64,000 nucleotides of DNA, taken from positions 141,518-205,517 of IMG/VR virus record IMGVR_UViG_3300030107_006644; one strand, 5' to 3'. The notes under the pieces are model-generated. The model was not told the origin of the DNA. It searched no databases and was given only the letters and a program-made list of their open reading frames with translations. The translations under genes and the position numbers were made by a program. Of this stretch, positions 2,256-30,400 are shown in pieces (the stretch's first letter is position 1; the number at the start of each line of letters is the position of its first letter).

Positions 2256-2302
2256 CTAAGCCGTCAATATACGTTATATTAGTTAAAGAAAAGGAGAAAA
2301 CT

Positions 2303-17269: not shown

Positions 17270-17573
17270 CGGCGAAAGGCTACAAGTTTACAAATACACG
17301 GCAGAAGATGAGAACGGACAGATAGTGTTTTACTACACATACCCCGAGAAAAGCGAGAGAATCGTCAAGAGGGTTGAAGACAAGATTAAACAAGATGTGA
17401 TCGTGTTCGATATATTTCCGGGCTTAATCAATGGTGACGAAGAACTAGAAGAGGCAATATGGGTGACAACGCAAATACAAACTCCCATGTATCTTCCGGC
17501 AGGCATGGGCGTAACTATGCATGACTTTGGAACCATACTATACGGAATCGCAGAAGATGACGAAGACTCTTGA
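17250..17573 (+). CDS. Acidic hypothetical protein
   Basis: 107 aa; its stop TGA lies inside the first TTGACA of promoter element P1. Confidence 0.7.
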   Translation: MELGKNSGERLQVYKYTAEDENGQIVFYYTYPEKSERIVKRVEDKIKQDVIVFDIFPGLINGDEELEEAIWVTTQIQTPMYLPAGMGVTMHDFGTILYGIAEDDEDS

Positions 17574-17624
17574 CATGTTGCTGACAACTTTTCCATTGAC
17601 AGGCGGGTCGTGATGAGCTATATT
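17570..17624 (+). promoter_or_regulatory. Triple-box sigma70-type promoter element P1
   Basis: TTGACA 17570, CTGACA 17581, TTGACA 17596, 17 bp, TATATT 17619. Confidence 0.9.
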
Positions 17625-17647
17625 ATTAGGGTAAACAGGAGGAAGCC

Positions 17648-17923
17648 TTGAAGGTTGGAGATTTGGTAACGCTTTCATCTTATGGTAAGCGCATTAACTA
17701 TATGGGTAAGTGCATAGCCCAGCGAAAATATAACGGAGGATTTCGTGGCCCGTTGATTGGGCTGGTTATCGCAAAAGTCGAGCCCACACATTCGTGGGAG
17801 AAGCAAATGAAGTATTCGGTTGCATGGATTGATAACTGCGAGTTCAATCCACAAGGTCGAGATAACTGGGTGAAGTATTTTCACCGCAAAGACCTTAAGA
17901 TGGTCAAAAAAGCAAAGAAGTAA
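17648..17923 (+). CDS. MKVGDLV-family SH3/KOW-like protein
   Basis: MKVGDLVTL...IGLVIA...YSVAW...DLKMV; AGGAGG SD. Confidence 0.8.
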   Translation: MKVGDLVTLSSYGKRINYMGKCIAQRKYNGGFRGPLIGLVIAKVEPTHSWEKQMKYSVAWIDNCEFNPQGRDNWVKYFHRKDLKMVKKAKK

Positions 17924-17933
17924 GGAGATAAAC

Positions 17934-18257
17934 ATGCATAGAACAATGATTATGACAATCGCAACGCTGATGGCAGCAGCAGCATACGCAGATGAACCCC
18001 CAACAGCGGTCGAAGTGCCAGCTACCGCAACGACACAGCCAGTGCGCGTAGTTACAGGTACGGTTGTCGATTCAATGGGCGGATCTGACCTCCACGGGGG
18101 ATGGGTCAAGGTTCATTTGGATGGTCAGCCCGAAGGACTAATCAACACCTTCAGCGATATTGTCTTTCCGCACACCTGTACCACACTCGGTGATAAGTTC
18201 TACATCGTCTTTGGTAGCGTTACAACCAGTATTACATGCGGGGAACCAACCAAGTGA
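17934..18257 (+). CDS. Secreted hypothetical protein
   Basis: Signal peptide ending AAAYA; AAGGAG SD. Confidence 0.7.
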   Translation: MHRTMIMTIATLMAAAAYADEPPTAVEVPATATTQPVRVVTGTVVDSMGGSDLHGGWVKVHLDGQPEGLINTFSDIVFPHTCTTLGDKFYIVFGSVTTSITCGEPTK

Positions 18258-18556
18258 GAAAGAAACTTAACAAAACCGTGGTGTGCGCTGATGGGTTCTC
18301 CATGAGCGTGCAGGCCAATGGCACCGCTTATTGTCATCCTCGTCAGGAGCATGCAGAGCAGTACACGGAGGTCGAGATCGGCTTTCCTAGCGAGGAGGAA
18401 GAGTTGCTGATGGAGTGGGCAGAGAATCCCAGTGAGCCGACCGATACCGTGTATGCGTGGGTGCCTGCTGGACGTGTTTCGCTCGTTATCGCAAAGCATG
18501 GCGGCATGGTGTCGGGGGAACTTCCTCCCGGCATTCCGCGACTGGAAGCCTGTTGA
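18254..18556 (+). CDS. Hypothetical phage protein
   Basis: CADGFSMSVQA...YCHPR...EVEIGFPS; stop lies inside P2 box 1. Confidence 0.75.
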   Translation: MRKKLNKTVVCADGFSMSVQANGTAYCHPRQEHAEQYTEVEIGFPSEEEELLMEWAENPSEPTDTVYAWVPAGRVSLVIAKHGGMVSGELPPGIPRLEAC

Positions 18557-18607
18557 CATTTACTTGACAAAGTTTTCCTTGACTTTGCGCTCACTGTAGA
18601 GTATATT
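18553..18607 (+). promoter_or_regulatory. Triple-box promoter element P2
   Basis: TTGACA 18553, TTGACA 18564, TTGACT 18579, 17 bp, TATATT 18602. Confidence 0.9.
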
Positions 18608-18613
18608 ATTTGT

Positions 18614-18871
18614 ATGAAACGGAAGTTGAACATTGGCGATTTGGTGCGAGTCACCGAGGACACACACGATTCAAGGATGCCTCCCTCACGCACTGGTCTG
18701 ATTGTGAGTCAGGTTTGCGAAGAGGCATGGAATGATGAAAAGGTGCCTGTCGGCGTGTTTAACGTATGGATGACGAACGGTGAAACTCTAAGGTTTCACG
18801 AAATGTTCTTGGTAAAGGTCGAAAGGGTCGAAAGGGTCGAAAGGAACGAAGATGAGAAGAGAGAAGATTAA
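18614..18871 (+). CDS. MKVGDLV-family SH3/KOW-like protein, probably leaderless
   Basis: LNIGDLVRV...TGLIVS...FNVWM; ATG 7 nt after the -10 hexamer, no SD. Confidence 0.75.
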   Translation: MKRKLNIGDLVRVTEDTHDSRMPPSRTGLIVSQVCEEAWNDEKVPVGVFNVWMTNGETLRFHEMFLVKVERVERVERNEDEKRED

Positions 18872-18948
18872 ACGGGCGTTGCGCCAAACTCTGCGGATCC
18901 TAATCCTAGGCTATCCCGCTATTTATTTCTAAACTACTGGAGAAAATC

Positions 18949-19098
18949 ATGGAAATCGGTACTATTGTTCAACACTTTGTGTGTGATTATCGAGGTCGAA
19001 TCGTGGCCATGGCCAATGGTCTGGTTCACGTCCTTGTCGATGGCGTTGGCGTTGTGGAAGATCGTGTTGAGAACTTTGTCTTGTCCGAAGCGGCTTGA
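18949..19098 (+). CDS. MKVGDLV-family SH3/KOW-like protein (49 aa, not in the ORF track)
   Basis: MEIGTIVQH...GRIVA...VHVLV; GGAG SD; stop lies in P3 box 1. Confidence 0.7.
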   Translation: MEIGTIVQHFVCDYRGRIVAMANGLVHVLVDGVGVVEDRVENFVLSEAA

Positions 19099-19149
19099 CA
19101 TTTTCTTGACAGGAAACCACTTGACGAATGAGCGTTTGGTGAGTATATT
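19095..19149 (+). promoter_or_regulatory. Triple-box promoter element P3
   Basis: TTGACA 19095, TTGACA 19106, TTGACG 19121, 17 bp, TATATT 19144. Confidence 0.9.
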
Positions 19150-19175
19150 ATATGGGTAAGCAGGAGAAAGCAAAC

Positions 19176-19373
19176 ATGGAACTTGATACACCTTTTGATA
19201 ATGCAGCTATCGCATGCGAATGCATTGTAACATCTGTCGCCTTTGCCTCGCAGGTAATCGAGGCGCAGAAGAAACTTCAACTACAGCCAGAAGAAAATCG
19301 TGAAATGGTTTCTATTCTACTGGAAACCTATGCTATCGCATGGCTGGAAGCAGACGGAGCAGCGCAAGCCTGA
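19176..19373 (+). CDS. Hypothetical protein
   Basis: AGGAG SD, ATG 19176. Confidence 0.65.
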   Translation: MELDTPFDNAAIACECIVTSVAFASQVIEAQKKLQLQPEENREMVSILLETYAIAWLEADGAAQA

Positions 19374-19660
19374 TGAAGACTGTAATCGTATTCGACACCG
19401 ATGATGAAGAGGGCATGCGTAATGCCTTCAAGATCGTTGATCATCTTTCAATGCAGTATCTCAACCAACGCTTGCGTGCGATGACTCCAACGGAGATTCG
19501 TTTCGGTCGGATCGAGTTTATAAAGATGATCCGTGCATATGCGAAACATATTACAGACGCTCAAAAGGCTGACGCCAAGGTAGACATTAACAGTCTTAGA
19601 TTCAACAAAGAGTATGCTGATAAGATTTGGCAGGAGAAACGCGCAAAGGCACTGATATGA
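19373..19660 (+). CDS. Hypothetical protein
   Basis: TGATG coupling to the upstream gene. Confidence 0.7.
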   Translation: MKTVIVFDTDDEEGMRNAFKIVDHLSMQYLNQRLRAMTPTEIRFGRIEFIKMIRAYAKHITDAQKADAKVDINSLRFNKEYADKIWQEKRAKALI

Positions 19661-19758
19661 AACACAACGAAGAACCAAAAACCGATCCACTATTCACTGC
19701 ATACCTGTGTGTGTGCGTGTTCTGGATGCTCGCTGCTAGTGTCGCAGCGGCAAGTTAA
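19657..19758 (+). CDS. Possible 33-aa membrane peptide
   Basis: ATGA coupling; hydrophobic; stop lies in GTTAAACCT. Confidence 0.4.
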   Translation: MKHNEEPKTDPLFTAYLCVCVFWMLAASVAAAS

Positions 19759-19779
19759 ACCTTCCGGCGGAGAAAACCA

Positions 19780-19917
19780 ATGGCTAAGAAGAAAATCAAA
19801 ACCATCAAACCTCGCAACTGGCTGGCGCTTCATGCCCGTCGTCGTCGCGGTGGTCCGATGAGGGATCGAAAGAAGGCAGCGAACAAGAAGGCATGCCGTG
19901 GGAGAGTCCATGCATAA
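19780..19917 (+). CDS. Small highly basic protein (45 aa, not in the ORF track)
   Basis: MAKKKIKTIKPRNWLALHARRRRGGPMRDRKKAANKKACRGRVHA; GGAG SD. Confidence 0.65.
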   Translation: MAKKKIKTIKPRNWLALHARRRRGGPMRDRKKAANKKACRGRVHA

Positions 19918-20230
19918 GAAGCTGATCGGAGCACTCGTTCGGTTCTTGCCTGTTGGCAACTATCATGAGTTTCACAATGCTGTGGGTATGGTGACTTCGC
20001 ATAATAAACCTTCACATGTTCGCGTCAAGTGGATCAAGCCTGTTCACTATGCCGTTCACAGCGAACACTACAAGTTTCATGGACCGGCGACGGTTTCGGA
20101 CTTTGACCTCGACCGGCTTGAAGTGATCAGTAGCGTACTTAGTGACGAGCAGCTTGAAAGCGTTGTCGGTGGTATGAGTCCAGAAAGTTTTAGTAACTGG
20201 CGAGCGGAGAAGTTAAATGAAAGTCGGTGA
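19910..20230 (+). CDS. MKVGDLV-family SH3/KOW-like protein
   Basis: LIGALVRF...VGMVT...VRVKW...RLEVIS; ends NESR overlapping the next start. Confidence 0.7.
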   Translation: MHKKLIGALVRFLPVGNYHEFHNAVGMVTSHNKPSHVRVKWIKPVHYAVHSEHYKFHGPATVSDFDLDRLEVISSVLSDEQLESVVGGMSPESFSNWRAEKLNESR

Positions 20231-20387
20231 TTTGGTTTGGATTGATTGGAATAGTTACCCAGAAGAGGCGTTCACTGCATCCGGCGTTATCATTAAGGAT
20301 GAGGGATTTAGCTTCTTTAGGGTCTTGTTTAACGGTGAGCAGAGGGTTTTCCATTCTGATTATCTGGAGGCACTCAATGAAGCATAG
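20217..20387 (+). CDS. MKVGDLV-family SH3/KOW-like protein (56 aa, not in the ORF track)
   Basis: MKVGDLVWI...SGVIIK...FRVLF...YLEALNEA. Confidence 0.8.
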   Translation: MKVGDLVWIDWNSYPEEAFTASGVIIKDEGFSFFRVLFNGEQRVFHSDYLEALNEA

Positions 20388-20565
20388 TGGTGCGCCGAGT
20401 GTGGGCGATCTCGTTGTGGCGCTCTATGACGAGCAGCGAGGACTCAAGTGTATCGGCCTTGTTTTAGATTGCCGAGGTATTGAGTGTCGAATCAAGTGGG
20501 CTTCGCGCAGCGACCCTATTGGGTGGTGGAGAAGAGATCAGTTAAGGGTTGTGCATGCCGCTTGA
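20377..20565 (+). CDS. MKVGDLV-family SH3/KOW-like protein
   Basis: PSVGDLVVA...IGLVLD...RIKW...QLRVV; GGAGG SD inside the upstream gene. Confidence 0.75.
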   Translation: MKHSGAPSVGDLVVALYDEQRGLKCIGLVLDCRGIECRIKWASRSDPIGWWRRDQLRVVHAA

Positions 20566-20618
20566 AGTCTTGGCAATAATGGTTATTTGGATATGTTTTT
20601 GGATATTAAGGGAGAAGT

Positions 20619-20822
20619 ATGAAAGTCGGTGATCTCGTTATTATGCCTGATCAGAAGCTGCTGAAGGATGAGCCTGTACCTATTGCCGTCGTGCTGCAAA
20701 CAAAGCATGATGGCATCAACCGAGGCACAAGCCATAAGCGTGTTAGGGTTCACTGGATTCAAGATAATGAAAGATCATGGGAGCCTGTGAAGTGGCTGGA
20801 GGTAATCAGTGCGGTTAGTTAG
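20619..20822 (+). CDS. MKVGDLV-family SH3/KOW-like protein
   Basis: MKVGDLVIM...VRVHW...WLEVIS. Confidence 0.8.
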   Translation: MKVGDLVIMPDQKLLKDEPVPIAVVLQTKHDGINRGTSHKRVRVHWIQDNERSWEPVKWLEVISAVS

Positions 20823-21141
20823 AGACATAAAGTTAGTTAGAGATTTAATCCCTCGCATCATCGAGGAGGAAGGAGGCACATGCAACAGTCGCACGGTTCA
20901 CGGGGTCGATGAACACCTTGTCTTTCTTAGAGTCAAGATGATCGAAGAGGTGAATGAGTTTATTGTGGATCCATCTTATGAAGAGGCTGCAGACATGTTA
21001 GAGGTTCTAAAAGCCTTTTGTTTATTAAATGGCTTGGATTTTGATACCGTGGTCAGCACGGCGCAAAGCAAACAAGAGGAGCGCGGAGGATTTCATCGCG
21101 GAGTCATCTTGCAGGAGGTAACAAACAGTGAAGATCGGTGA
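20809..21141 (+). CDS. MazG-like / phosphoribosyl-ATP pyrophosphohydrolase-family NTP pyrophosphatase
   Basis: KLVRDLIPRII...KMIEEVNEF...EE.AD.LEV...K.EERGGF. Confidence 0.85.
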   Translation: MRLVRDIKLVRDLIPRIIEEEGGTCNSRTVHGVDEHLVFLRVKMIEEVNEFIVDPSYEEAADMLEVLKAFCLLNGLDFDTVVSTAQSKQEERGGFHRGVILQEVTNSEDR

Positions 21142-21334
21142 CTTGGTAAGATGGTGCGGAAAAATCTGCGTTGTTACGGAGGTTTATGAAAGCAAGATAT
21201 GGCGCACCGACAAAATGGGAAAGATGGTGCGTTGGGGAGAGATTGAACCCGAGCCTTTCGCCCGAATCTTGCTTGGCGATGAGCTGCGTGGTGTGCCGCA
21301 AACGGACCTAGAGGTAGTCAGTGGGTGCAGCTAA
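21128..21334 (+). CDS. MKVGDLV-family SH3/KOW-like protein
   Basis: MKIGDLVRW...DLEVVS. Confidence 0.8.
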   Translation: MKIGDLVRWCGKICVVTEVYESKIWRTDKMGKMVRWGEIEPEPFARILLGDELRGVPQTDLEVVSGCS

Positions 21335-21573
21335 ATGTAACCATACTTCCCGGCGATCTGCTATGGCAGTTGCGACCTCCGCACGGAGTCTGCCTATTGT
21401 TGGAGATAAAAGACCTTCCACAAGACGTTCGCTCAATGAAAGGCTGGATTTCTCAAGACTATCCAGTATACAGACTATTACATCAAGCTGGGTTCATTTT
21501 TGAGGATCCCCATTACTATTACGAGAAGTTAAACCTTAGCCGACAGGAGAAACAAGATGGCAACTTGTATTAA
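21325..21573 (+). CDS. Divergent SH3/KOW-like protein
   Basis: ILPGDLLW...VCLLLE...YRLL. Confidence 0.6.
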   Translation: MQLNVTILPGDLLWQLRPPHGVCLLLEIKDLPQDVRSMKGWISQDYPVYRLLHQAGFIFEDPHYYYEKLNLSRQEKQDGNLY

Positions 21574-21754
21574 ATGTGAAGAAGAATATAACGATAAGCG
21601 ACTAGCCCTAGGCTACCGCACATGCTTGGACTGTGGCGGTCGCGATGCCAACAGGATCAGTCGAGCGAGAACAGCACAGGTTCTCAAGTCAATGACGCCA
21701 AATCATTATGAAGGTAGTCCCGAAGACCTGTTCGATAAGCCCGACGAGTCTTGA
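21557..21754 (+). CDS. C4 zinc-finger protein (DksA/TraR-finger-like)
   Basis: CIKCEEEYNDKRLALGYRTCLDCG; stop lies in P4 box 1. Confidence 0.65.
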   Translation: MATCIKCEEEYNDKRLALGYRTCLDCGGRDANRISRARTAQVLKSMTPNHYEGSPEDLFDKPDES

Positions 21755-21805
21755 CATTTACTTGACAACTGCACCCTTGACTTTCCCGGTCAGGGGTGCT
21801 ATATT
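21751..21805 (+). promoter_or_regulatory. Triple-box promoter element P4
   Basis: TTGACA 21751, TTGACA 21762, TTGACT 21777, 17 bp, TATATT 21800. Confidence 0.9.
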
Positions 21806-21832
21806 ATAGGGGTAATCAGCAAGGAGTATACA

Positions 21833-21997
21833 GTGAACTTGACAGAAGATGAAATCGTTGACCTGATCGACTGCGTTAACAATCGCATTGATGACCTGAT
21901 GGACTGCGCCATGTTTGGCGATGCCGTCGAGATTGAGAGCGAGATTGAGAGGATGAATGAACTATCAACTAAACTTAGCGAAGCATTGGAGGCTTAA
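21833..21997 (+). CDS. Small very acidic helical protein (54 aa, not in the ORF track)
   Basis: AAGGAG SD, GTG start; 16 D/E versus 3 K/R. Confidence 0.7.
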   Translation: MNLTEDEIVDLIDCVNNRIDDLMDCAMFGDAVEIESEIERMNELSTKLSEALEA

Positions 21998-21999
21998 AC

Positions 22000-22365
22000 A
22001 TGGGCTATCGTTCAACAGCTATTCTCGCGGTCAGCAAAGAGGCTCGACCGTATCTTATGCACTTTCTCGGTAAAACACCGGCTGCTATGGAACTTTGTTT
22101 CGGACCACATGCGGATCGTACCGAAGACTTCCAAGGCGAAGAAGGGTCGGTCATGTTTCGTTTCGACAGCATTAAGTGGTACGAGGGCTATAAGGAGATC
22201 GACGCTATCGAGTCCTTCATGAGCCACATGGACTGCGACGAAGCAGAAGAACTGGGCGAGGGATGCGAGCATTATCGCTTTGTACGTACTGGCGAAGAGT
22301 ACGAGGATATTGAACAGCGTGGTTATGCCTTTGACATTCACCCGTCAGTCGGTATCGAGTATTAA
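22000..22365 (+). CDS. Acidic hypothetical phage protein
   Basis: MGYRSTAILAV...IKWYEGY...YRFVRTGEEYED. Confidence 0.75.
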   Translation: MGYRSTAILAVSKEARPYLMHFLGKTPAAMELCFGPHADRTEDFQGEEGSVMFRFDSIKWYEGYKEIDAIESFMSHMDCDEAEELGEGCEHYRFVRTGEEYEDIEQRGYAFDIHPSVGIEY

Positions 22366-22393
22366 AGTTAAAGGTTGATAACAGGATCATAAC

Positions 22394-22591
22394 ATGAAGT
22401 ATACAATACCGCAAGCAGGATCGATGATCGGCGCTCTCGCTACTGGTGAGAACATCAAAGGGATTCAGATCGTTGTCGAGTACAAGTGTGACGCGAAAGG
22501 CGAGTGGATTCGATTCATTAAAGATCCACCAGATCATTGGTGGGATCTTAGCAATATAAACATTATTTCAAAGAAGGAACAGAATGGCTAA
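22394..22591 (+). CDS. Hypothetical protein
   Basis: 65 aa, AGGA SD. Confidence 0.6.
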   Translation: MKYTIPQAGSMIGALATGENIKGIQIVVEYKCDAKGEWIRFIKDPPDHWWDLSNINIISKKEQNG

Positions 22592-22856
22592 CTTAGCATT
22601 TTCAGGAGAGAAGGTATCGCAGGACGAGGTGAAGAAAGCGTTGATGGCTATTTTAGCCGAGGACTGGCCCGAAGCCTTTACCGTAGACTTTCATTCAGAC
22701 GGTGGAGGATCGGTGGTTCGCGCCATCGTCGAATGTCACAACACCGACGATCATTTAGACAAGTCCTTGACTGACAAGCTGCCACTTAAGTTTATGGGAT
22801 GGCGACTTGTGATATTAAAGGTTCCTATTGGTCATGTTGGAGTCTTTTACTCCTGA
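22584..22856 (+). CDS. Hypothetical protein
   Basis: 90 aa; stop lies in P5 box 1. Confidence 0.7.
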   Translation: MANLAFSGEKVSQDEVKKALMAILAEDWPEAFTVDFHSDGGGSVVRAIVECHNTDDHLDKSLTDKLPLKFMGWRLVILKVPIGHVGVFYS

Positions 22857-22907
22857 CATTCTCTTGACAACTTTGCTATTGACTTCGACCCTCGCAGGTG
22901 CTATATT
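22853..22907 (+). promoter_or_regulatory. Triple-box promoter element P5
   Basis: CTGACA 22853, TTGACA 22864, TTGACT 22879, 17 bp, TATATT 22902. Confidence 0.9.
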
Positions 22908-22932
22908 ATATGAGTAACCAAGGAGAGTACAC

Positions 22933-23277
22933 ATGGCCTATCTCACGAAAGACGATCTCGTAATCATTCGCACAAGCGACACCACCATTCAGGCGCGTGT
23001 TGTAGACATGCAGTTTCGGCGCTTCAAGCGTTCATGGCAGGACAAGAAGACTGGTGAGTGGAAATACCGATGGAAGTCCGTGCCTTATGCGATTTGCGAG
23101 TGCTTCATCGGCGCTCCTGTCGGTACAGAGTTCTTGATTCCCGGCTATAAGCTGAAGAGTGAGGTCAAGAACGGAGAAAGTCTGCTTGTTCTCCGCGACA
23201 AGTATGCAGCCGAGTTCGATGGCGAGTGGGTAAGTAAGATGTTGGCCGAAAGCAAGGCCAAGCGAGCTAGTGCGTGA
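22933..23277 (+). CDS. Hypothetical protein, possibly a divergent SH3-like fold
   Basis: AAGGAG SD; LTKDDLVII...ARVVDM. Confidence 0.75.
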   Translation: MAYLTKDDLVIIRTSDTTIQARVVDMQFRRFKRSWQDKKTGEWKYRWKSVPYAICECFIGAPVGTEFLIPGYKLKSEVKNGESLLVLRDKYAAEFDGEWVSKMLAESKAKRASA

Positions 23278-23438
23278 AAGTCGGTGATCTGGTAAAGTAT
23301 AGACGCAACGCGGTAGACGCTGGTGTGGGCATCGCTCTCATCGAGGGTGCCAATGCGCGGTGGACGATTCTGTGGTCAACCGGCGTGAGTGAGATCGTTA
23401 GAGAAGAAAACTTGAAGGTGATCAATGAAAGTCGGTGA
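23274..23438 (+). CDS. SH3/KOW-like array gene 1 (54 aa, not in the ORF track)
   Basis: MKVGDLVKY...GVGIALI...WTILW...NLKVINESR. Confidence 0.8.
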   Translation: MKVGDLVKYRRNAVDAGVGIALIEGANARWTILWSTGVSEIVREENLKVINESR

Positions 23439-23604
23439 TATAGTAACTTGTAGCTACGGTATTGGCATGGTGGCAGCAAAGGCTTTGCAGCATGACGGCC
23501 CGCTATTCCGTATCATATTCAACGCTTTCCCAGAGCGCAAGATATGGGTTCGCCCGTGGGAACTGGAGGTAATCAGTGCAAGTCGGCGATCTGGTCAAGT
23601 TTGA
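23425..23604 (+). CDS. SH3/KOW-like array gene 2 (59 aa, not in the ORF track)
   Basis: MKVGDIVTC...GIGMVA...FRIIF...ELEVISASR. Confidence 0.8.
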   Translation: MKVGDIVTCSYGIGMVAAKALQHDGPLFRIIFNAFPERKIWVRPWELEVISASRRSGQV

Positions 23605-23764
23605 AACTAACTCATGGGTGATGCAGCGGGACGACTATGCAAATCCCGGTGTGATCGTGGAAGACGTGTCTGGCGTGAGCACCCGACGCTACCGAGTCAT
23701 GTGGGCCGATCAGAGAATCACGGTCGAACATGAAGGTTATCTTAAACCTTTGACATCTTCTTGA
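23576..23764 (+). CDS. SH3/KOW-like array gene 3
   Basis: MQVGDLVKF...PGVIVE...YRVMW; stop lies in P6 box 2. Confidence 0.8.
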   Translation: MQVGDLVKFETNSWVMQRDDYANPGVIVEDVSGVSTRRYRVMWADQRITVEHEGYLKPLTSS

Positions 23765-23803
23765 CAAGATCCGCTTGACTTCCATGCTCGCCCATGCTAT
23801 ATT
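23750..23803 (+). promoter_or_regulatory. Triple-box promoter element P6
   Basis: TTGACA 23750, TTGACA 23761, TTGACT 23775, 17 bp, TATATT 23798. Confidence 0.9.
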
Positions 23804-23825
23804 ATATGGGTAATCAGGGAGAGAT

Positions 23826-24008
23826 ATGATTAAGGTTGGCGATTTGGTAAGGATAGCGGAGCCCTTCATGGGCTATCAGGGTCAAGTGGGTATCGTTACA
23901 AAGATCCCGCTGACCGAGCGTGGCATGTGGGCTATCCTGCTCACATCCGGCGAGCTTATCGCCACGAGGCTTATGTCACGTATGGAGGTCGTCAATGAAA
24001 GTCGGTAA
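23826..24008 (+). CDS. SH3/KOW-like array gene 4
   Basis: MIKVGDLVRI...VGIVT...WAILL...MEVVNESR. Confidence 0.8.
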   Translation: MIKVGDLVRIAEPFMGYQGQVGIVTKIPLTERGMWAILLTSGELIATRLMSRMEVVNESR

Positions 24009-24174
24009 TCTAGTAAGTGTGAAGCGCACTCATGGCCGAGAGCCTGTCATCGGTGTTATCATCGAGATCAAGGAAGACGAACACAATCGAGTCGCACTTG
24101 TTGAGTCTATTAAAGGTAACTATCGGCTTTATGCTAACCCTCTCGACATCGAGGTGATAAGTGACTGTCGGTGA
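23995..24174 (+). CDS. SH3/KOW-like array gene 5
   Basis: MKVGNLVSV...IGVIIE...DIEVISDCR. Confidence 0.8.
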   Translation: MKVGNLVSVKRTHGREPVIGVIIEIKEDEHNRVALVESIKGNYRLYANPLDIEVISDCR

Positions 24175-24379
24175 TCTCGTTAAAGTTACACGCGCATCCA
24201 TCGGCGTGCCTGTTGGGACATTGGGTCTAATCATGTCCTCGCATGAAACCCGTGGAGACTATGATACTGCGTCGGGCGAGAAGATTCACATACTGCAGCT
24301 TATTGGAGGTGATTTTGCATGGGGGCAGAACCGTCGTTATTTGGGGAGAGACTTGGAGGTAATCAATGCAAGTCGGTGA
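24161..24379 (+). CDS. SH3/KOW-like array gene 6
   Basis: MTVGDLVKV...LGLIMS...DLEVINASR. Confidence 0.8.
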   Translation: MTVGDLVKVTRASIGVPVGTLGLIMSSHETRGDYDTASGEKIHILQLIGGDFAWGQNRRYLGRDLEVINASR

Positions 24380-24539
24380 TTTGGTGAGGAACCGTAACTC
24401 TGAGGGCGGCCTGCTGGGTATTATTGTGGGCTGGCAGGATCTCAGTTATGAGGGTTTGCAGCCTATTATACACTGGTTCGACGGGCGCACAAGTTGGATT
24501 ATGGCGCATCGCGTGGAGGTCATCAATGCAAGTCGGTAG
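24366..24539 (+). CDS. SH3/KOW-like array gene 7 (57 aa, not in the ORF track)
   Basis: MQVGDLVRN...LGIIVG...IIHW...RVEVINASR. Confidence 0.8.
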   Translation: MQVGDLVRNRNSEGGLLGIIVGWQDLSYEGLQPIIHWFDGRTSWIMAHRVEVINASR

Positions 24540-24735
24540 TCTATACAGGTTTGACCGTATCAACGGTCACACAACAACCGTGAATGGCCGGTTGGCGATT
24601 TATTTGGGCGAAGCCTTCATCCGTCGAGACGATGGCGTGACCATCGAGAACCACAGGGTTTTGATGGTTGGGAACACAAGCCCGACGATCATTGATCGCG
24701 GCCTGCTGAAGCACATGCGAGAGGTGACAGCATGA
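24526..24735 (+). CDS. SH3/KOW-like array gene 8
   Basis: MQVGSLYRF...LAIYLG...HRVLM...MREVTA. Confidence 0.75.
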   Translation: MQVGSLYRFDRINGHTTTVNGRLAIYLGEAFIRRDDGVTIENHRVLMVGNTSPTIIDRGLLKHMREVTA

Positions 24736-24905
24736 AAGTCGGTGATCTGGTAACACAGTCGCATGCCGGGAGTAATACAGGCATCATCATAGCCATCGAT
24801 CCCGAAGAAATCGGAGATTCAAAAGAAGTGCTGGTATTCTGGGACGATGGCGAAGTTTGGAACCATTCGATGCGGTTTCTGGAGGTGATCAGTGCAAGAT
24901 CCTAG
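24732..24905 (+). CDS. SH3/KOW-like array gene 9 (57 aa, not in the ORF track)
   Basis: MKVGDLVTQ...TGIIIA...VLVFW...FLEVISARS. Confidence 0.8.
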   Translation: MKVGDLVTQSHAGSNTGIIIAIDPEEIGDSKEVLVFWDDGEVWNHSMRFLEVISARS

Positions 24906-25092
24906 ACCTTGGAAGGTGGGCGATCTAGTCAGGATTAAACGCACTGGTGAGACTGCGTTGATATTGTACGTTGCCGATGCGTCCATCGGCTGCAAAATGA
25001 TTAAGATTCATACGGGCGAGTATTTCGCCCCTTGGAAGTTAAACCTTGTTAGCAAGGGAGCTAACAAGGTCGAAGAAGGGAGAGAGGAATGA
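24892..25092 (+). CDS. SH3/KOW-like array gene 10
   Basis: WKVGDLVRI...TALILY...KLNLVS. Confidence 0.8.
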   Translation: MQDPRPWKVGDLVRIKRTGETALILYVADASIGCKMIKIHTGEYFAPWKLNLVSKGANKVEEGREE

Positions 25093-25442
25093 TGCCGATT
25101 TGGGTTTTTATGGTTCGCTACGATGGCGAAATGGCTTGCAGTACGCACTTGACGGAGAAGGGCGCGATCCTGACCGCGATTGAAGACGTGCTGCAGTACC
25201 TTGGAGTAGAAGACGAAGAGGACGCGAAGAACATATTTAGCGAACCGAGAAGATACAGTAATGTTTCCGCAGTCGAAGCAGCACTGAAAGAAGACGAGGT
25301 TCAACCTCCCGAATGGGATATTGGAAAGATGCAGAAGATGAATCGTGAACAACTTTATCGAGTCTATGCCGGATGGTGCGAGAAGACGTGGGATCACCAC
25401 ATCTACGAGTGCGAGATCATGAAAACGACGGTGACCGGATGA
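25089..25442 (+). CDS. Acidic hypothetical protein
   Basis: 117 aa; ATGA coupling at both ends. Confidence 0.75.
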   Translation: MMPIWVFMVRYDGEMACSTHLTEKGAILTAIEDVLQYLGVEDEEDAKNIFSEPRRYSNVSAVEAALKEDEVQPPEWDIGKMQKMNREQLYRVYAGWCEKTWDHHIYECEIMKTTVTG

Positions 25443-25762
25443 AGTTAAACCTTGAAGCTGCACCCGTCGAGGTTGTCTGGCCGCCGTGTCTCTCGACTAT
25501 CGGAGGCAAGCGATATGCGATCAGCGGCAACGTCTGGATCGAAGTACCGATGTCCACCGTGTTCGACGATTTGCCTCGATATATGGTCTGTGAGGCCCGC
25601 AAAGCCCCTGTGACGGCTCCGTGTCAGTCATGGGAGGTACAGGGTAGCAAAGGCAACAAGTACGCTGTGAGGCTGTCTGAGGGTGTCTGGTCCTGCTCAT
25701 GTCCCGGCTACTCGTTCCGTCGCAAATGTCGCCATATTGAGGAAAAGAAGATTGAAGTTTAA
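25439..25762 (+). CDS. SWIM zinc-finger protein
   Basis: GSKGNKYAV...WSCSCPGYSFRRKCRHI. Confidence 0.8.
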   Translation: MKLNLEAAPVEVVWPPCLSTIGGKRYAISGNVWIEVPMSTVFDDLPRYMVCEARKAPVTAPCQSWEVQGSKGNKYAVRLSEGVWSCSCPGYSFRRKCRHIEEKKIEV

Positions 25763-25937
25763 GGTTGGTGACTTGGTGACTTGGAGGAATGGCCTTGCTC
25801 AACCTCCCGGTATCATATTAAAGGTTTCCACCGAAAGGCGTGCGTACCTTATTTGCTTTCCGCATAAGAGCGTCACCCAGTGGTGTCCCGACGAGTTCTT
25901 GAACCAGTTGACAACCTCTTTACAAGAAAATCCTTGA
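25752..25937 (+). CDS. MKVGDLV-family SH3/KOW-like protein
   Basis: FKVGDLVTW...PGIILK...YLICF; stop lies in the -35 box of P7. Confidence 0.75.
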   Translation: MKFKVGDLVTWRNGLAQPPGIILKVSTERRAYLICFPHKSVTQWCPDEFLNQLTTSLQENP

Positions 25938-25962
25938 CTTTGGGCCTGAAAGACTATATATT
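25908..25962 (+). promoter_or_regulatory. Triple-box promoter element P7
   Basis: TTGACA 25908, TTTACA 25919, TTGACT 25934, 17 bp, TATATT 25957. Confidence 0.88.
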
Positions 25963-25986
25963 ATAGGGGTAACAAGGAGAGATACC

Positions 25987-26181
25987 ATGCAACCCGTGAT
26001 TCCACTTGACAAGATTCTTGAGCGCATGCGCGAAGAGCAACAGCCCGAGCGCCCAGCTTTGCGACTGTATGCACCCGAGCCTTCACCCGGTGATCCTCGC
26101 GACCATGAGTGGCCACCACGCCGGATCGAAGAAGACGAGCAGCCCGAAAGAGGGGTTGCAATCATTGATTTCACGATTTGA
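25987..26181 (+). CDS. Small hypothetical protein
   Basis: AAGGAG SD; EQQPERPALRLY...RGVAIIDF; stop lies in P8 box 1. Confidence 0.75.
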   Translation: MQPVIPLDKILERMREEQQPERPALRLYAPEPSPGDPRDHEWPPRRIEEDEQPERGVAIIDFTI

Positions 26182-26231
26182 CATTTCCCTGACATTTTAG
26201 ACTTGACTTTCTCTCTTCCCTGTGAGATAAT
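26178..26231 (+). promoter_or_regulatory. Triple-box promoter element P8
   Basis: TTGACA 26178, CTGACA 26189, TTGACT 26203, 17 bp, GATAAT 26226. Confidence 0.85.
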
Positions 26232-26254
26232 ACAGGGGTAATCAAGGAGATCCC

Positions 26255-27058
26255 ATGCCCCGTGTGACCTACGCCGACCGCTTCGCTGCCCTTCTCGCCC
26301 GCCCGCTATCCAGTAGCGACCGGAGATTCTGCGAAAGTCTGCGAGACTTCTACCAGCGCAAAGGTCGCCTGACCTCTGGGCGTGTGCGGTGTTTTAAGCA
26401 GCTTGAGGAGCGTTACAGTGCCGAGAGGCTAGCCGAGGCTGCAGAGCGCGGCGGGCCGATGCTCAAGCGATTGAGCGGCCTTCTGCCCCGCGTGGAGGGC
26501 AACAAATGGGCAAGCGGATTCGTGATGAGTCTATCCCAACAAGTTCAAGGAGGGCGCAATCTCTCCGACAAGCAGATTACAATGCTTGAAAAGATCGAGC
26601 GAGAAAACAGTGATGAAGCAATCGCAGCACGACAGACATGGCATCTTGATTATGATGACGACAAGCGTTTGCGTGCGATGGTCGCGGCTCGATACTACCG
26701 GGAGAGCGGAGGCTACTTCCGCGATCTGGTTAACAAGATTCTTGAAAACCCTGACTTCGTGCCGTCCCAGCGGCAGTACAGGTCTATCACCGAGAACAAG
26801 TATGCACAGAAGGTCTTGGATGCCCATTTCGCCGCGCCTAAGTACGCGGTCGGGTCATTCGTCGCGATGCGCTCCAGCGCACCGTGGGCATGCCGTAGCG
26901 GGGCCGGAAACAAGCCTTGCGTTGTCATCCAGACCGATGCCGCTCCTGTCGTCAGTGCAGCCCGAGGAGTCAAGCGTTACAAGGTGCTGCCCATCGGATC
27001 GGCAAGGCCGATCATTGTCGAGGAGCGACACATTAAAGCTGCGAGAGGACTTAAATAA
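26255..27058 (+). CDS. Hypothetical protein with C-terminal SH3/KOW-like domain; paralog of 1638..2255
   Basis: RYY..GGYF..L..KIL.NPDFVPS..QY..IT.NKYA.KVL...YAVGSFV...IVEERHIK. Confidence 0.8.
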   Translation: MPRVTYADRFAALLARPLSSSDRRFCESLRDFYQRKGRLTSGRVRCFKQLEERYSAERLAEAAERGGPMLKRLSGLLPRVEGNKWASGFVMSLSQQVQGGRNLSDKQITMLEKIERENSDEAIAARQTWHLDYDDDKRLRAMVAARYYRESGGYFRDLVNKILENPDFVPSQRQYRSITENKYAQKVLDAHFAAPKYAVGSFVAMRSSAPWACRSGAGNKPCVVIQTDAAPVVSAARGVKRYKVLPIGSARPIIVEERHIKAARGLK

Positions 27059-27061
27059 CCA

Positions 27062-27228
27062 GTGCGGCCCCACCACATATATAACTAAAGGTGGGATTCA
27101 ATGCCTTGAGTGAATCCACTGCGCTCCACCAGTCCCTTTGCGGGATGAGGACGTGAACCCGAGAGGGAGTCGAAACAAGGCTGGCGAGGAAGACGCGGTA
27201 AGGACAGCGATCATCGGTGGGGCCGCAC
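27062..27228 (+). ncRNA. Candidate structured ncRNA, 167 nt
   Basis: Perfect 13-bp terminal inverted repeat GTGCGGCCCCACC/GGTGGGGCCGCAC enclosing hairpins GGATTCA/TGAATCC, GTCCC/GGGAT and CCC-GAGA-GGG; no ORF. Confidence 0.6.
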
Positions 27229-27266
27229 CCCCTTCAACTTAAACCTTTGAACTTTTGAGAAAACAC

Positions 27267-27665
27267 ATGAAAGTAGAACTGACCGACATTGAGATTATCC
27301 ACATTATGAACGCGCTTAAGCTGACAGCCAACAAGCTCCGCGAAAAGCACTCGATTTCTGGTGACATGGAGCAAGCCGATCTTGCCGACGAACTTGAAGA
27401 GATCGAGTTTGACTTGTTTGAGGCTGTCAATCGACGCGATGACGACTGGCTAGCCGACCGAGACGATCCCACAGACCTTATGGGCCAAACGCTCTCAGAG
27501 CCGGATGCTGCCCTTTCATTCGTGCAGGCAGGCATTGACGCCCGCGAGCAAGTTAAAGGTTCCTCAATGGCCGCACAACGCCGGGAAGAGCAGGTTAAGC
27601 GCATGATGAAAGGTACAGCCACACCACGCGATCCTGACTTCATGAATGATCCGGTGGACTGGTAA
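27267..27665 (+). CDS. Acidic hypothetical protein
   Basis: ATG 27267; helical and D/E-rich. Confidence 0.7.
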   Translation: MKVELTDIEIIHIMNALKLTANKLREKHSISGDMEQADLADELEEIEFDLFEAVNRRDDDWLADRDDPTDLMGQTLSEPDAALSFVQAGIDAREQVKGSSMAAQRREEQVKRMMKGTATPRDPDFMNDPVDW

Positions 27666-27677
27666 ATCAAACCTCTC

Positions 27678-27732
27678 TTGACATTCTCTTTACAACTTTA
27701 ACCTTGACTTCCTCACTCATATCGGCTATATT
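27678..27732 (+). promoter_or_regulatory. Triple-box promoter element P9
   Basis: TCAAAC 27667, TTGACA 27678, TTTACA 27689, TTGACT 27704, 17 bp, TATATT 27727. Confidence 0.88.
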
Positions 27733-27777
27733 ATAAGGGTAAGAACGAGTTGAACCCCCTGACTTTGGAGATTTTAC

Positions 27778-28560
27778 ATGGGTAACTATTCTGGAACTAT
27801 TCGATGCGGTCACTGTTACGAGCGAGGCCACAATCGGGCTGGCTGCGAGAAGCTGACCGAGCAACTTGCTACACAATGGAGTCGCATCGAGACTGCGGGG
27901 TATGATGATGACAACTATACTCATAAGCGCACCCGTCAAATGCTAGCCAAGCGTCAGGGGTCTGACCCTCTCACTGGTGAGAGCACCCGCAAGCGTCGGG
28001 CGACCTACGGAGGCCGCAAGTGCTCATACTGCGGCGAGCCGGGTCACACTCGTCGCACTTGTCCGTCGATGAAGACTGACAAACAGAACTATCGCACGTT
28101 GACTGCAGCATCGCGCTCGACCCTCATTGAACGCATGCGCGAGCATGGTTTCGGACCCGGCTCGCTCTTGACTACCGTGTCAAAGGATTGGGAGGATGGC
28201 GAGTACAAGACCCGCACGGTCCCGATGATTGTCAAGTCCGTGGACTGGGAAGCGATCCACCAACGGACATGGGGCAGTCAGGGTCAGGGTGGCCCCGAAT
28301 GTGTCACAGTGCTCCGCATGAATGATAGCCGCATCGTTCAGATTATGCTTCCTAACTGCGTTACAGGCTACGATCCTAGCTGGAATCGCGTTGAGCTTGC
28401 TGGTCGAGTAGAGGACGTGCAGCCTCCCGCTGGATGGCTCGATGCATCGGAACTCGACTCCAAGACCATGGGCCAAGTGGTCGAACTCTTTGAAACTGGG
28501 GTTGCCCGCGACTACTACTGGTGGCAGCGACAGCCCGAAATAGAAGGACAGGAAGGTTAA
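27778..28560 (+). CDS. Protein with two CCHC zinc knuckles
   Basis: CGHCYERGHNRAGC and CSYCGEPGHTRRTC. Confidence 0.8.
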   Translation: MGNYSGTIRCGHCYERGHNRAGCEKLTEQLATQWSRIETAGYDDDNYTHKRTRQMLAKRQGSDPLTGESTRKRRATYGGRKCSYCGEPGHTRRTCPSMKTDKQNYRTLTAASRSTLIERMREHGFGPGSLLTTVSKDWEDGEYKTRTVPMIVKSVDWEAIHQRTWGSQGQGGPECVTVLRMNDSRIVQIMLPNCVTGYDPSWNRVELAGRVEDVQPPAGWLDASELDSKTMGQVVELFETGVARDYYWWQRQPEIEGQEG

Positions 28561-28567
28561 ACCTTTC

Positions 28568-28622
28568 TTGACATTCTCTTGACAACTTCGCTATTGACTT
28601 TTCCTCTCCCCTGTGGGATAAT
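28568..28622 (+). promoter_or_regulatory. Triple-box promoter element P10
   Basis: TTAAAC 28557, TTGACA 28568, TTGACA 28579, TTGACT 28594, 17 bp, GATAAT 28617. Confidence 0.88.
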
Positions 28623-28651
28623 ACAGGGGTAATCGAGCAAGGAGCTATCCG

Positions 28652-29212
28652 ATGACTGACACGCCGACCACTTCTGACCTTCGCGCCCTCAAGCTGACCG
28701 AGGACGAATGGCACTCACTCATGCACATGGGTGAGTTTGATCCTATTCGCGCTCACATGGATATGCTTGTGCTGGCTGGGCTTGCCGTGCGAACGCACAT
28801 TCACCCGCCCGAATGGGATCTGACCGAGGCCGGTCACGCAGCCTGCAACGCGATTGATCTCATCCTCGACTGGGATGACTTTGTATTCGTAGGCGACGGA
28901 GAGGACACCGAGCCTTTCGGCGTTATTCAGCTTGAGAACGCTTCTGATGCCTCTGATACGGTCTTCCTGAATGGTGAGCCTATCGAGCGCAGCGAAGCCG
29001 TAGAACTGGCTTCTGAGGCCCCTAAGCGCATCGGCGTAGGATCGCTTGTGCGCCACCAGCACCACGGCGAAGGTCTAGTGACCGATCATTTCATGTGGGA
29101 TGGCGACTGGGGCGGCTTCAGGATTAAACTTCTTAAACCTTCCCAAACTGGCGCTACAACCTCGATTACCGAGTTTAGTGACCGCGCCGATTCCTTTGAA
29201 CTTGTAAGTTAA
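28652..29212 (+). CDS. Acidic hypothetical protein with C-terminal SH3/KOW-like domain
   Basis: IGVGSLVRHQHHGEGLVT...FRIKL...FELVS. Confidence 0.75.
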   Translation: MTDTPTTSDLRALKLTEDEWHSLMHMGEFDPIRAHMDMLVLAGLAVRTHIHPPEWDLTEAGHAACNAIDLILDWDDFVFVGDGEDTEPFGVIQLENASDASDTVFLNGEPIERSEAVELASEAPKRIGVGSLVRHQHHGEGLVTDHFMWDGDWGGFRIKLLKPSQTGATTSITEFSDRADSFELVS

Positions 29213-29219
29213 ACCTCTC

Positions 29220-29274
29220 TTGACATTTACTTGACAAGATAATCCTTGACCTTTTACCCCCACCGTGCTATATT
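29220..29274 (+). promoter_or_regulatory. Triple-box promoter element P11
   Basis: TTAAAC 29209, TTGACA 29220, TTGACA 29231, TTGACC 29246, 17 bp, TATATT 29269. Confidence 0.9.
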
Positions 29275-29323
29275 TATAATGTGAGCGAGGGATGAACCCT
29301 CGCCTTGACCTAGGAGTCCTATC

Positions 29324-30391
29324 ATGGCTGTCGATTTCGCCACTTTCCGTTCTGTCGTTCCTCATGTCACTGCTGCCCGCTTCCCCGTGCTCTTGCGCGG
29401 TCGTCACGGTGTCGGTAAATCACAGGTTGTTTATCAGCTTGCAGGCGATCTCGATCTCCCCGTTGTGGAGCGTCGAGCTTCGCAAATGACCGAGGGCGAT
29501 CTTCTCGGCCTTCCGTCTACCGATGGCGCGACCACCCGATGGAACCCGCCTGTCTGGTTTAAGACCGCGTGCGAGACTCCTGTTGTGCTCTTTCTGGATG
29601 AGGTTGACCGTGCGACGGTCGAGGTCCGTCAGGGCATTTTCGAGTTGACCGATAGCCGCAAGCTGGCTGGGTTCTCGCTCCATGAGGACACGATCATCAT
29701 CGCAGCCGTCAACGGTGGCGAACATGGCGCTCAATATCAGGTCGGCGAAATGGACCCGGCAGAGCTTGACCGCTACACGGTCTTCGACGTTGAGCCTTCC
29801 CATGAGGATTGGCTTGAGTGGGCGAAGTCTAACGTCGATGGCGTCGTTTGGGACTTCATCAACAACAATCGGAACCACCTTGAGCACGCTGGCGACTTTG
29901 AGCCGAACAAGGTTTACCCTTCCCGTCGTTCGTGGGATCGGCTCAATCAGGCTGCGACTGGTGCGGCTCTCTTTGAAGAGGGTGCCGATCTCGGTCTGCT
30001 CTACAACCTGACTTGCGCGTTTGTCGGCTTTGAAGCTGGCGTTGCGTTCAAGGACTTCGTTGAGAACTATTCCCGTCAGGTCACTGTCGAGGATATTTTG
30101 GTCAAGGGTGAGATTGACCGTACCTCCGAGTTCACGATCAACGAGCACAGTGCTTTGGTCGAAAAGATGGAGGCAACCGAGACTTTCGCGGATCACCTGC
30201 CTTCCGAGCAGATTCAGAACCTCGCTGATTTCTTCGTCACGCTGCCTTCTGAAGTTGCTATGAAGCTGTGGACCGTCATGGGTAACGGCGAGATCCAGAA
30301 CACTGTCGATCTCCACCAGTCCACTGCGTCCGATGGTCGCTCCGTGTCTGGATACCTCGTTGAGCTTCTGACCGGCGAGGCAGCAAGTTAA
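29324..30391 (+). CDS. MoxR-like AAA+ ATPase
   Basis: Walker A GRHGVGKS, Walker B LFLDEVDR, MDPAELDRY, YPSRRSW. Confidence 0.92.
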   Translation: MAVDFATFRSVVPHVTAARFPVLLRGRHGVGKSQVVYQLAGDLDLPVVERRASQMTEGDLLGLPSTDGATTRWNPPVWFKTACETPVVLFLDEVDRATVEVRQGIFELTDSRKLAGFSLHEDTIIIAAVNGGEHGAQYQVGEMDPAELDRYTVFDVEPSHEDWLEWAKSNVDGVVWDFINNNRNHLEHAGDFEPNKVYPSRRSWDRLNQAATGAALFEEGADLGLLYNLTCAFVGFEAGVAFKDFVENYSRQVTVEDILVKGEIDRTSEFTINEHSALVEKMEATETFADHLPSEQIQNLADFFVTLPSEVAMKLWTVMGNGEIQNTVDLHQSTASDGRSVSGYLVELLTGEAAS

Positions 30392-30400
30392 ACCTTGAAC

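What the first reader, a model, noticed from the sequence alone, without database searches (positions are those of the whole stretch)
17570..30395. Each of the 12 promoter elements is fused to the stop codon of the upstream gene
Seen: for P1-P8 the upstream ORF ends on the TGA inside a TTGAC/CTGAC box (17573, 18556, 19098, 21754, 22856, 23764, 25937, 26181). For P10-P12 it ends on the TAA inside GTTAAAC (28560, 29212, 30391), and for P9 immediately before TCAAAC (27665). Inference: either the element supplies the stop for incoming genes at recombination joints, or genome compaction trimmed genes to the first available stop.
Basis: partly seen in the sequence, partly recalled or inferred. Interest (0 to 1): 0.65.

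Follow-up and report, generated by a model that had tools for sequence, protein, structure and literature searches.

The report
Gene stops overlap phage promoter boxes
In a tightly packed T4-like marine phage, twelve repeated early promoters sit directly on the ends of the preceding genes, so the TGA inside a TTGACA promoter box doubles as the stop codon; this is genome economy at swappable promoter cassettes, not a device that caps newly arrived genes.

Summary
All 12 stop coordinates check. Six stops are the TGA of the most distal TTGACA box (box 1). One is in box 2 and one is in the -35 box itself. Three are the TAA of a TTAAACC motif 5' of box 1. P9's stop lies 12 nt before box 1.

The same triple-box promoter occurs more than 300 times in about 90 related IMG/VR loci, many from contigs of about 190-205 kb. 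Across 89 upstream-gene families, 58% end on the box 1 TGA (1/3 expected for random-frame read-through, p=3e-6).

Homologues that are not followed by an element have C-termini of the same length (median difference 0 aa, 36 families). Fused and unfused states alternate within families. Gene-gene junctions in these phages overlap about as often (52-68%). Box 1 is conserved whether or not it holds the stop.

So the spacer, not the protein, has been squeezed out. Only the last codon (NCT in 81% of fused families) and the stop come from the element.

The elements are recombination joints like the PeSLs of T4-type phages: P6 is a chimera with its crossover between the -10 and the Shine-Dalgarno. The crossover lies downstream of the stop, so genes keep their own ends. 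A designed three-frame stop is not supported.

Verdict: ordinary compaction at a new variant of PeSL-like cassettes.

The parts
17570..17624 (+). P1 triple-box promoter (box 1 to -10). The stop of ORF 17250-17573 is the TGA 17571-17573 inside box 1.
18553..18607 (+). P2. The stop of ORF 18236-18556 is the TGA 18554-18556 in box 1.
   Evidence: Homologue L073 ends the same way; others have their own TAA or TAG.
19095..19149 (+). P3. The stop of ORF 18949-19098 is the TGA 19096-19098 in box 1.
   Evidence: In L073 (92% aa identity) box 1 reads TTAACA and the stop at the same place is TAA.
21751..21805 (+). P4. The stop of ORF 21557-21754 is the TGA 21752-21754 in box 1. A 12-bp hairpin (21771-21799) spans the -35.
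   Evidence: The L022 homologue has its own TGA plus a 4-nt spacer.
22853..22907 (+). P5. Box 1 is CTGACA. The stop of ORF 22584-22856 is the TGA 22854-22856.
23743..23803 (+). P6. TAAACC plus box 1 lie inside ORF 23576-23764 and encode its tail LKPLTSS. The stop TGA 23762-23764 is in box 2. The element is a recombinant chimera.
   Evidence: alignment A1
25908..25962 (+). P7. Boxes 1 and 2 are coding (tail LTTSLQENP). The stop TGA 25935-25937 lies in the -35 hexamer.
26178..26231 (+). P8. The stop of ORF 25987-26181 is the TGA 26179-26181 in box 1.
27663..27732 (+). P9. The gene's own TAA (27663-27665) is followed by ATCAAACCTCTC and then box 1 at 27678. Not fused.
   Evidence: The C-terminus ...NDPxDW is the same in all 18 homologues listed, whatever follows.
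28557..28622 (+). P10. The TAA 28558-28560 lies in TTAAACC directly 5' of box 1 (28568).
29209..29274 (+). P11. The TAA 29210-29212 lies in TTAAACC directly 5' of box 1 (29220).
30388..30487 (+). P12. The TAA 30389-30391 lies in the first TTAAACCTT copy. A GC hairpin (30401-30421) and a second TTAAACCTT copy (30422-30430) follow, then box 1 at 30433.
2252..2280 (+). Control: an ordinary single-box sigma-70-like promoter. The upstream ORF's stop (TGA 2253-2255) is also inside the -35 TTGACT.
39131..39159 (+). Control: a single-box promoter. The stop of ORF 35934-39134 (TGA 39132-39134) is inside the -35 TTGACA.

Best explanation
The 12 elements are host-sigma-70-type early promoters of a T4-like phage. 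Each carries two extra TTGACA-like direct repeats at about -50 and -61. They head small ORFan cassettes in a hyperplastic region.

The genome is packed to about 96% coding, so the non-functional spacer between a gene's end and the next functional signal has been deleted. Because TTGACA contains TGA, the tightest arrangement that leaves both protein and promoter intact is to let the gene's stop coincide with the TGA of the 5'-most box. Only the last codon (usually NCT, so Ser, Ala, Pro or Thr) is then dictated by the element's conserved C at -1 and the first T of the box.

A minority of genes run deeper. Their last 4-10 residues (LTxS*, LTTSLQENP*) are encoded by the boxes, and they stop at the TGA of box 2 or box 3.

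Shown here: the positions, the clade-wide pile-up, unchanged C-terminal lengths, repeated fused/unfused switches within families, equal compaction at gene-gene junctions, and box 1 conservation independent of stop use.

Inferred: that deletion bias or selection for economy is the driver, and that the elements are active early promoters.
For: - Coordinates and architecture.
- Only 12 such elements exist in the genome.
- More than 300 copies occur in about 90 related loci.
- Of 89 upstream-gene families, weighted by family, 51 end at the box 1 TGA, 9 at box 2, 4.5 elsewhere inside the element, 15 within 20 nt upstream and 9 farther upstream.
- Within-family switches occur without any change to the protein. 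In the ...HPDCCND family the forms are TGA/TAA + TCTC + TTGACAT and GAC|TGACAT. In the ...IAID(A/S/G/Q) family similar switches occur. 20 of 40 multi-member families are mixed.
- Tail length against element-less homologues has a median difference of 0 aa.
- Box 1 is a perfect TTGACA in 69 of 78 elements whose upstream stop lies before it.
- Four-box elements place the stop in the extra distal box.
- Gene-gene junctions: 52% overlap overall, and 68% of those under 40 nt. G000 is 96.5% coding.
- Single-box promoters elsewhere in the genome also carry or abut the upstream stop.
- The last codon is NCT in 81% of fused families.
Against:
- No explicit forward simulation of deletion and compaction was run. 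The match to compaction rests on internal controls.
- Of 113 elements with TA at +20/+21 in the box 2-box 3 spacer, 109 read TAA or TAG. That could hint at selection for a third-frame stop, although these spacers are related by descent.
- My gene calls come from a home-made codon-score caller.
Confidence: 0.7

Rival explanations
1. Plug-and-play cassette boundary. The element's 5' edge (TAA in TTAAACC, TGA in box 1, TGA in box 2, TAA or TAG in the spacer) is selected as a multi-frame ORF terminator, so any gene placed upstream by recombination is closed.
For: - The elements are recombination joints.
- P10-P12 close all three frames within 26 nt.
- Two frames are closed in about 100% of elements.
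- The spacer codon at +20 is TAA or TAG in 109 of the 113 elements that have TA there.
- Some genes do take their last 4-10 residues and their stop from the element.
Against: - C-termini have the same length as in element-less homologues.
- The observed crossover is downstream of the stop.
- The third frame is open to +41..+62 in P1-P5 and is closed in only 47% of elements.
- Frame use is 59:15:15, not the even split expected for genes arriving in random frames.
- The TGAs come for free with TTGACA.
Confidence: 0.15
2. Functional coupling. Ending translation exactly at the distal box matters for regulation, for example by limiting ribosome or RNA-polymerase read-through interference with the promoter, or by avoiding Rho loading on an untranslated gap.
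For: - There is a strong pile-up at one position.
- No frame-1 gene has lost the box 1 stop; the only variants at G are G-to-A, which give TAA.
Against: - 27% of families keep their own stop 4-95 nt upstream of apparently normal elements.
- Genes ending in box 2, box 3 or TTAAACC coexist in one genome.
- About 75-95 nt of untranslated leader follows in every case.
- Gene-gene junctions show the same degree of overlap.
Confidence: 0.08
3. Chance, or an ORF-calling artefact.
For: In the window alone, 6 of 12 stops at box 1 is not significant (p=0.18).
Against: - Clade-level statistics on 89 families.
- Conserved protein tails across homologues.
- Two independent frame or gene-calling procedures agree.
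Confidence: 0.02

Closest known systems
PeSLs (promoter-early stem-loop cassettes) of T4-type phages (Arbiol et al. 2010, PMC2839356; Comeau et al. 2014, PMC4122927)
   Same: - Near-consensus sigma-70 early promoters repeated in a hyperplastic ORFan region of a T4-like genome (Gp23 capsid).
- They fill the whole space from the upstream stop to the downstream ATG.
- They bound shuffled cassettes.
- The crossover mapped between the -10 and the Shine-Dalgarno, the same interval as one of the sequenced PeSL mini-circles.
   Different: - No general stem-loop.
- Two extra TTGACA direct repeats stand where PeSLs have an AT-rich upstream region.
- The upstream stop codon lies inside the element rather than before it.
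- Mini-circles were not tested.
Overlapping stop/start junctions (ATGA, TAATG) in compact phage and bacterial genomes (general knowledge)
   Same: Two signals share bases because the spacer has been eliminated. The frequency here is similar: 52-68% of gene-gene junctions against 58% of gene-element junctions.
   Different: Here the shared signal is a DNA-level promoter box, not a translational start.
T4 early promoters with upstream (-42/UP-like) determinants (from memory; not tested here)
   Same: Strong early promoters with an extended -10 and sequence information upstream of the -35.
   Different: The upstream information here is two -35-like hexamers spaced 11 and 15 nt apart, not an A/T-rich tract.
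OmpR/PhoB-type direct-repeat operators (Pho box: 7-bp repeats with an 11-bp period; from memory, a lead only)
   Same: TTGACAT-N4-TTGACAA has the same layout of a 7-bp repeat plus a 4-bp spacer.
   Different: The sequence differs, it sits upstream of an intact -35, and no binding protein was tested.

Membership tests
PeSL | Sigma-70-like early promoter (-35, about 17 nt, -10) | tested here: met
   All 12 have TTGAC(T/A/G/C) or TTGATT, a 17-nt spacer and TATATT or GATAAT, 7 with a TG-extended -10. This is a consensus match only; there is no transcript data.
PeSL | Stable stem-loop as an integral part of the motif | tested here: not met
   The arm-pairing test gave the same result as its permutation control. 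Mean MFE z-score was -0.14 over 314 elements, with 6% below -2. Only P4, P8, P10 and P12 carry hairpins.
PeSL | Repeated in hyperplastic regions and flanking ORFans | tested here: met
   12 copies in 13 kb. The flanking genes have no Pfam or PHROG hits. Gene order is only 27-31% conserved between relatives.
PeSL | Occupies the intergenic space from the upstream stop to the downstream ATG | tested here: met
   Stop-to-start gaps are 49-119 nt and are filled by the element.
PeSL | Copies recombine with each other (chimeric elements, cassette deletion or insertion, mini-circles) | tested here: inconclusive
   One clear chimera (P6), one cassette insertion at the element's edge (P9) and permuted cassettes. 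Mini-circles need wet-lab inverse PCR.
PeSL | Host genome is a T4-type myovirus | tested here: met
   PF07068 (Gp23) at 202 bits in G000. The nearest cultured relatives reach only 30% aa identity.
Designed three-frame translational stop | Stops in all three frames in every copy | tested here: not met
   The third frame is closed in 47% of 318 elements. It is open to +41..+62 in P1-P5.

The most novel reading that the evidence does not exclude
The triple-TTGACA elements are a stem-loop-less class of mobile regulatory cassettes in an uncultured clade of marine T4-like phages. Their repeated boxes are kept partly because they guarantee termination of whatever ORF lies upstream after any crossover within the element. 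On this reading one sequence acts at once as promoter, recombination site and ORF terminator.
Probability: 0.12. Interest if true: 0.6.

Novelty: new variant of a known kind. Interest (0 to 1): 0.35.

Why it matters
The result gives a clean, quantified case of how far a phage can overlap a DNA-level signal (a promoter box) with a translational signal (a stop codon). It shows that the promoter then dictates the last residue of dozens of unrelated proteins.

It extends the PeSL idea of promoter cassettes as recombination joints to an uncultured marine T4-like clade with a different promoter architecture of three phased -35-like boxes.

For annotation there are two practical points. ORFs ending ...S/A/P* on TTGACA are genuine ends. 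C-terminal tails of the form LTxS are promoter-encoded.

The stop overlap itself is ordinary compaction and does not point to a new mechanism.

Tried and rejected
- Megablast and blastn of the region against GenBank phages found no match. A protein search found only relatives at 30% identity.
- Pfam and PHROGs scans of the upstream and neighbouring small genes gave no hits.
- A stem-loop around the -10 looked plausible by eye in P6, P8 and P10, but it disappears against permuted arms and in MFE z-scores.
- The three-frame stop design was rejected.
- Random-frame read-through to the first stop was rejected.
- The prediction that unfused genes should end more often in K/E/Q/M/W gave only a weak result: 31% against a 25% background.
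- The segment covariation test gave only small effects. The 3' part of the element follows the downstream gene. The box 1-box 2 spacer follows the upstream gene only marginally, 0.66 against 0.62.
- A literature search for stop codons overlapping -35 boxes found nothing relevant.
- My first regular expression had the wrong box spacing and found nothing.
- The costly protein searches, structure prediction and complex prediction were not used, because the question did not need them.
Full report
**Context.** The window is the last 64 kb of a 205,517-bp IMG/VR virus record. Nearly all genes lie on the + strand, and by my codon-score gene caller the record is 96.5% coding. It encodes a T4-type major capsid protein (PF07068, 202 bits), so it is a T4-like myovirus. 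It has no DNA-level relative among GenBank phages. Its MoxR-type ATPase reaches only 30% identity to Vibrio phages of about 190-195 kb.

**Check of the observation.** Reading the 12 sites and locating the boxes gives one architecture:

- box 1 (T/C)TGACAT;
- 4 nt;
- box 2 TTGACAA or TTTACAA;
- 8 nt;
- box 3 TTGAC(T), which is the true -35;
- a 17-nt spacer;
- TATATT or GATAAT, often with a TG-extended -10;
- GGGTAA, a Shine-Dalgarno and the start codon.

There are exactly 12 such elements in the whole genome. All lie between window positions 17570 and 30487 on the + strand.

- P1-P5 and P8 stop on the TGA of box 1.
- P6 stops on the TGA of box 2, with box 1 inside the ORF.
- P7 stops on the TGA of the -35 hexamer, with boxes 1 and 2 coding.
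- P10 and P11 stop on the TAA of TTAAACC directly before box 1.
- P12 uses the TAA of a first TTAAACCTT copy. A hairpin (30401-30421) and a second copy separate it from the promoter.
- P9 has its own TAA 12 nt before box 1.

**Relatives.** A 20-base pattern spanning the three boxes hit 90 stretches of IMG/VR contigs, many from contigs of 185-205 kb. A looser expression found 364 elements in these loci plus the window's genome.

**Where upstream genes end.** I chose the coding frame upstream of each element by codon log-odds. Of 299 usable elements, 171 have the stop on the box 1 TGA and 29 on the box 2 TGA. Sixteen stop elsewhere inside the element. The rest stop upstream, mostly within 17 nt.

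I then anchored only on box 2, box 3 and the -10, so that box 1 was not preselected, and collapsed the upstream proteins into 89 families. The family-weighted counts are:

| Stop position | Families |
|---|---|
| box 1 TGA | 51.2 |
| box 2 TGA | 9.1 |
| elsewhere inside the element | 4.5 |
| within 20 nt upstream | 15.0 |
| farther upstream | 9.1 |

The frames split 59.3: 14.5: 15.2. Random-frame read-through to the first stop predicts thirds and is rejected (p=3e-6 and 2e-10). In the window alone, 6 of 12 is not significant (p=0.18).

**Is box 1 an artefact of stop codons?** No. In elements whose upstream gene stops earlier, box 1 is a perfect TTGACA in 69 of 78. Some elements carry a fourth, more distal TTGACAA, and the stop then sits in that box. 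The rule is that the gene ends in the 5'-most conserved motif.

**Homologue C-termini.**

- The 12 window genes have homologues in many loci.
- The P9 gene family ends ...NDPxDW* in all 18 homologues listed, whether an element (spacers of 3-12 nt) or another gene follows.
- The families ...HPDCCND and ...IAID(A/S/G/Q) contain both unfused members (TGA or TAA + TCTC + TTGACAT, or TAG + TCC + TTGACAT) and fused members (GAC|TGACAT, or GCT|TGACAT) with the same protein end.
- Twenty of the 40 families with two or more members are mixed.
- Systematically, genes fused at box 1 differ in tail length from homologues not followed by an element by a median of 0 aa. This covers 1,283 pairs in 36 families, 81% of them within +-2 aa.
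- What the element does dictate is the last codon. It is NCT (Ser 43%, Ala 21%, Pro 12%, Thr 6%) in 81% of fused families, against about 25% in the background. The cause is the conserved C at -1 and the first T of the box.

**Genes that run deeper.** P6 and its two homologues end LTSS*, with TTG ACA read as Leu-Thr. P7 ends LTTSLQENP*. The P8 family is DFTI* in the window but DLTIS* in L003, where box 1 is coding. A family LKFHEMFLE(H/P)FTSS* has TTTACA as box 1. In these cases the boxes encode the tail and box 2 or box 3 supplies the stop.

**Compaction controls.**

- In the genome, 39% of + strand junctions overlap.
- In the related loci, 51.5% of non-element junctions overlap, and 68% of those shorter than 40 nt.
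- Ordinary single-box promoters elsewhere in the genome behave the same way. The stops at 2253-2255 and 39132-39134 are the TGA of a -35 hexamer, and the others lie 5-11 nt before it or overlap it.
- The gene-to-element overlap frequency therefore matches the genome's general packing.

**Three-frame stop idea.** TAA (in TTAAACC), the box 1 TGA and the box 2 TGA lie in three different frames in P10-P12. In P1-P5 the third frame stays open to +41..+62. Clade-wide it is closed in only 47% of elements.

**Are the elements recombination joints?** Yes, in the manner of PeSLs (PMC2839356, PMC4122927).

- Promoter-headed cassettes are permuted among genomes. For example, [P]f77 f37 [P]f40 [P]f76 [P]f46 [P]f47 in the window corresponds to [P]f40 [P]f77 [P]f46 [P]f47 in L068 and to [P]f40 f76 [P]f46 [P]f47 [P]f77 in L006.
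- When only one of two homologous genes is followed by an element, the next gene differs in 91% of pairs.
- Alignment A1 shows that P6 is a chimera. The upstream gene and the element as far as TATATGGGTAATCA match the f383 junction of L044. From the Shine-Dalgarno onward the sequence is nearly identical to a different L044 junction (f382 to f38).
- The crossover therefore lies between the -10 and the Shine-Dalgarno. That is the same interval as in one of the sequenced PeSL mini-circles (PMC2839356).
- P9 is orthologous to the L044 element upstream of the same downstream gene, although the upstream genes differ. Homology starts at AACCTCTC.
- Because crossovers fall downstream of the stop, each gene keeps its own end. 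The elements do not cap incoming genes.
- The defining PeSL stem-loop is absent as a general feature.

**Conclusion.** The finding is real and statistically robust at clade level. The best explanation is spacer elimination between gene ends and a functionally conserved promoter whose boxes happen to contain TGA (confidence 0.7). The elements themselves are a new variant of PeSL-like cassettes.

**Limits.** Gene calls are my own.

Noticed in passing
window 54371-54707; tRNAs at 55923-56004, 56246-56319, 57631-57712, 58051-58122, 58153-58224: The phage encodes a tmRNA (Rfam RF00023, 126.7 bits) and five tRNAs.
   Followed up: no
window 27062-27228: A 208-nt gap between genes holds a GC-rich region closed by a 13-bp stem (MFE -71 kcal/mol, z -2.4). 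It has no Rfam family. It is absent at the corresponding junction of relative L044 and looks inserted together with gene 27267-27665.
   Followed up: partly
window 14133, 19755, 21529, 25039, 25445, 27239, 28557, 29209, 30388, 30422, 31718, 32655, 32795 (first T of TTAAACCT): The motif (a)AGTTAAACCTT occurs 21 times on the + strand against 3.4 expected, and 3 times on the - strand. It clusters at 14-33 kb, often at gene ends with its TAA used as the stop. In other subclades the same TTAAACC fills the box 2-box 3 spacer directly 5' of the -35. Its function is unknown.
   Followed up: partly
G000 intergenic gaps, e.g. window 14440-14450 and 18920-18930; G000:C1 90380, 90670, 98990: Many other intergenic regions carry a(a)CTATTTAt about 20-30 nt before the start codon. 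This is a candidate late-promoter consensus that differs from T4's TATAAATA.
   Followed up: no
window 23425/23438, 24161/24174, 24366/24379, 24526/24539, 24892/24905; 265 junctions in the loci: Arrays of small paralogous ORFans (N-terminus M-K-V-G-D-L-V) are joined by a conserved 14-nt overlap, cTGGAGGTnATCAATGAAAGTCGGTGA. The upstream stop TGA lies inside the next gene's Gly-Asp codons, and the Shine-Dalgarno lies inside the upstream tail LEVI.
   Followed up: partly
window 21771-21799: P4 carries a 12-bp inverted repeat that encloses its -35 hexamer. The hairpin is conserved in L044 downstream of a different gene.
   Followed up: no
window 29324-31707 and 61765-63078: There is a MoxR-like AAA ATPase next to a DUF2201 metallopeptidase/VWA protein, and a PhoH-like gene. 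The protein at 27778-28560 has a zinc-knuckle hit.
   Followed up: no
window 26000-32000: GC content is 54-56% here against 38-50% elsewhere in the window, and the GC skew drops to zero.
   Followed up: no
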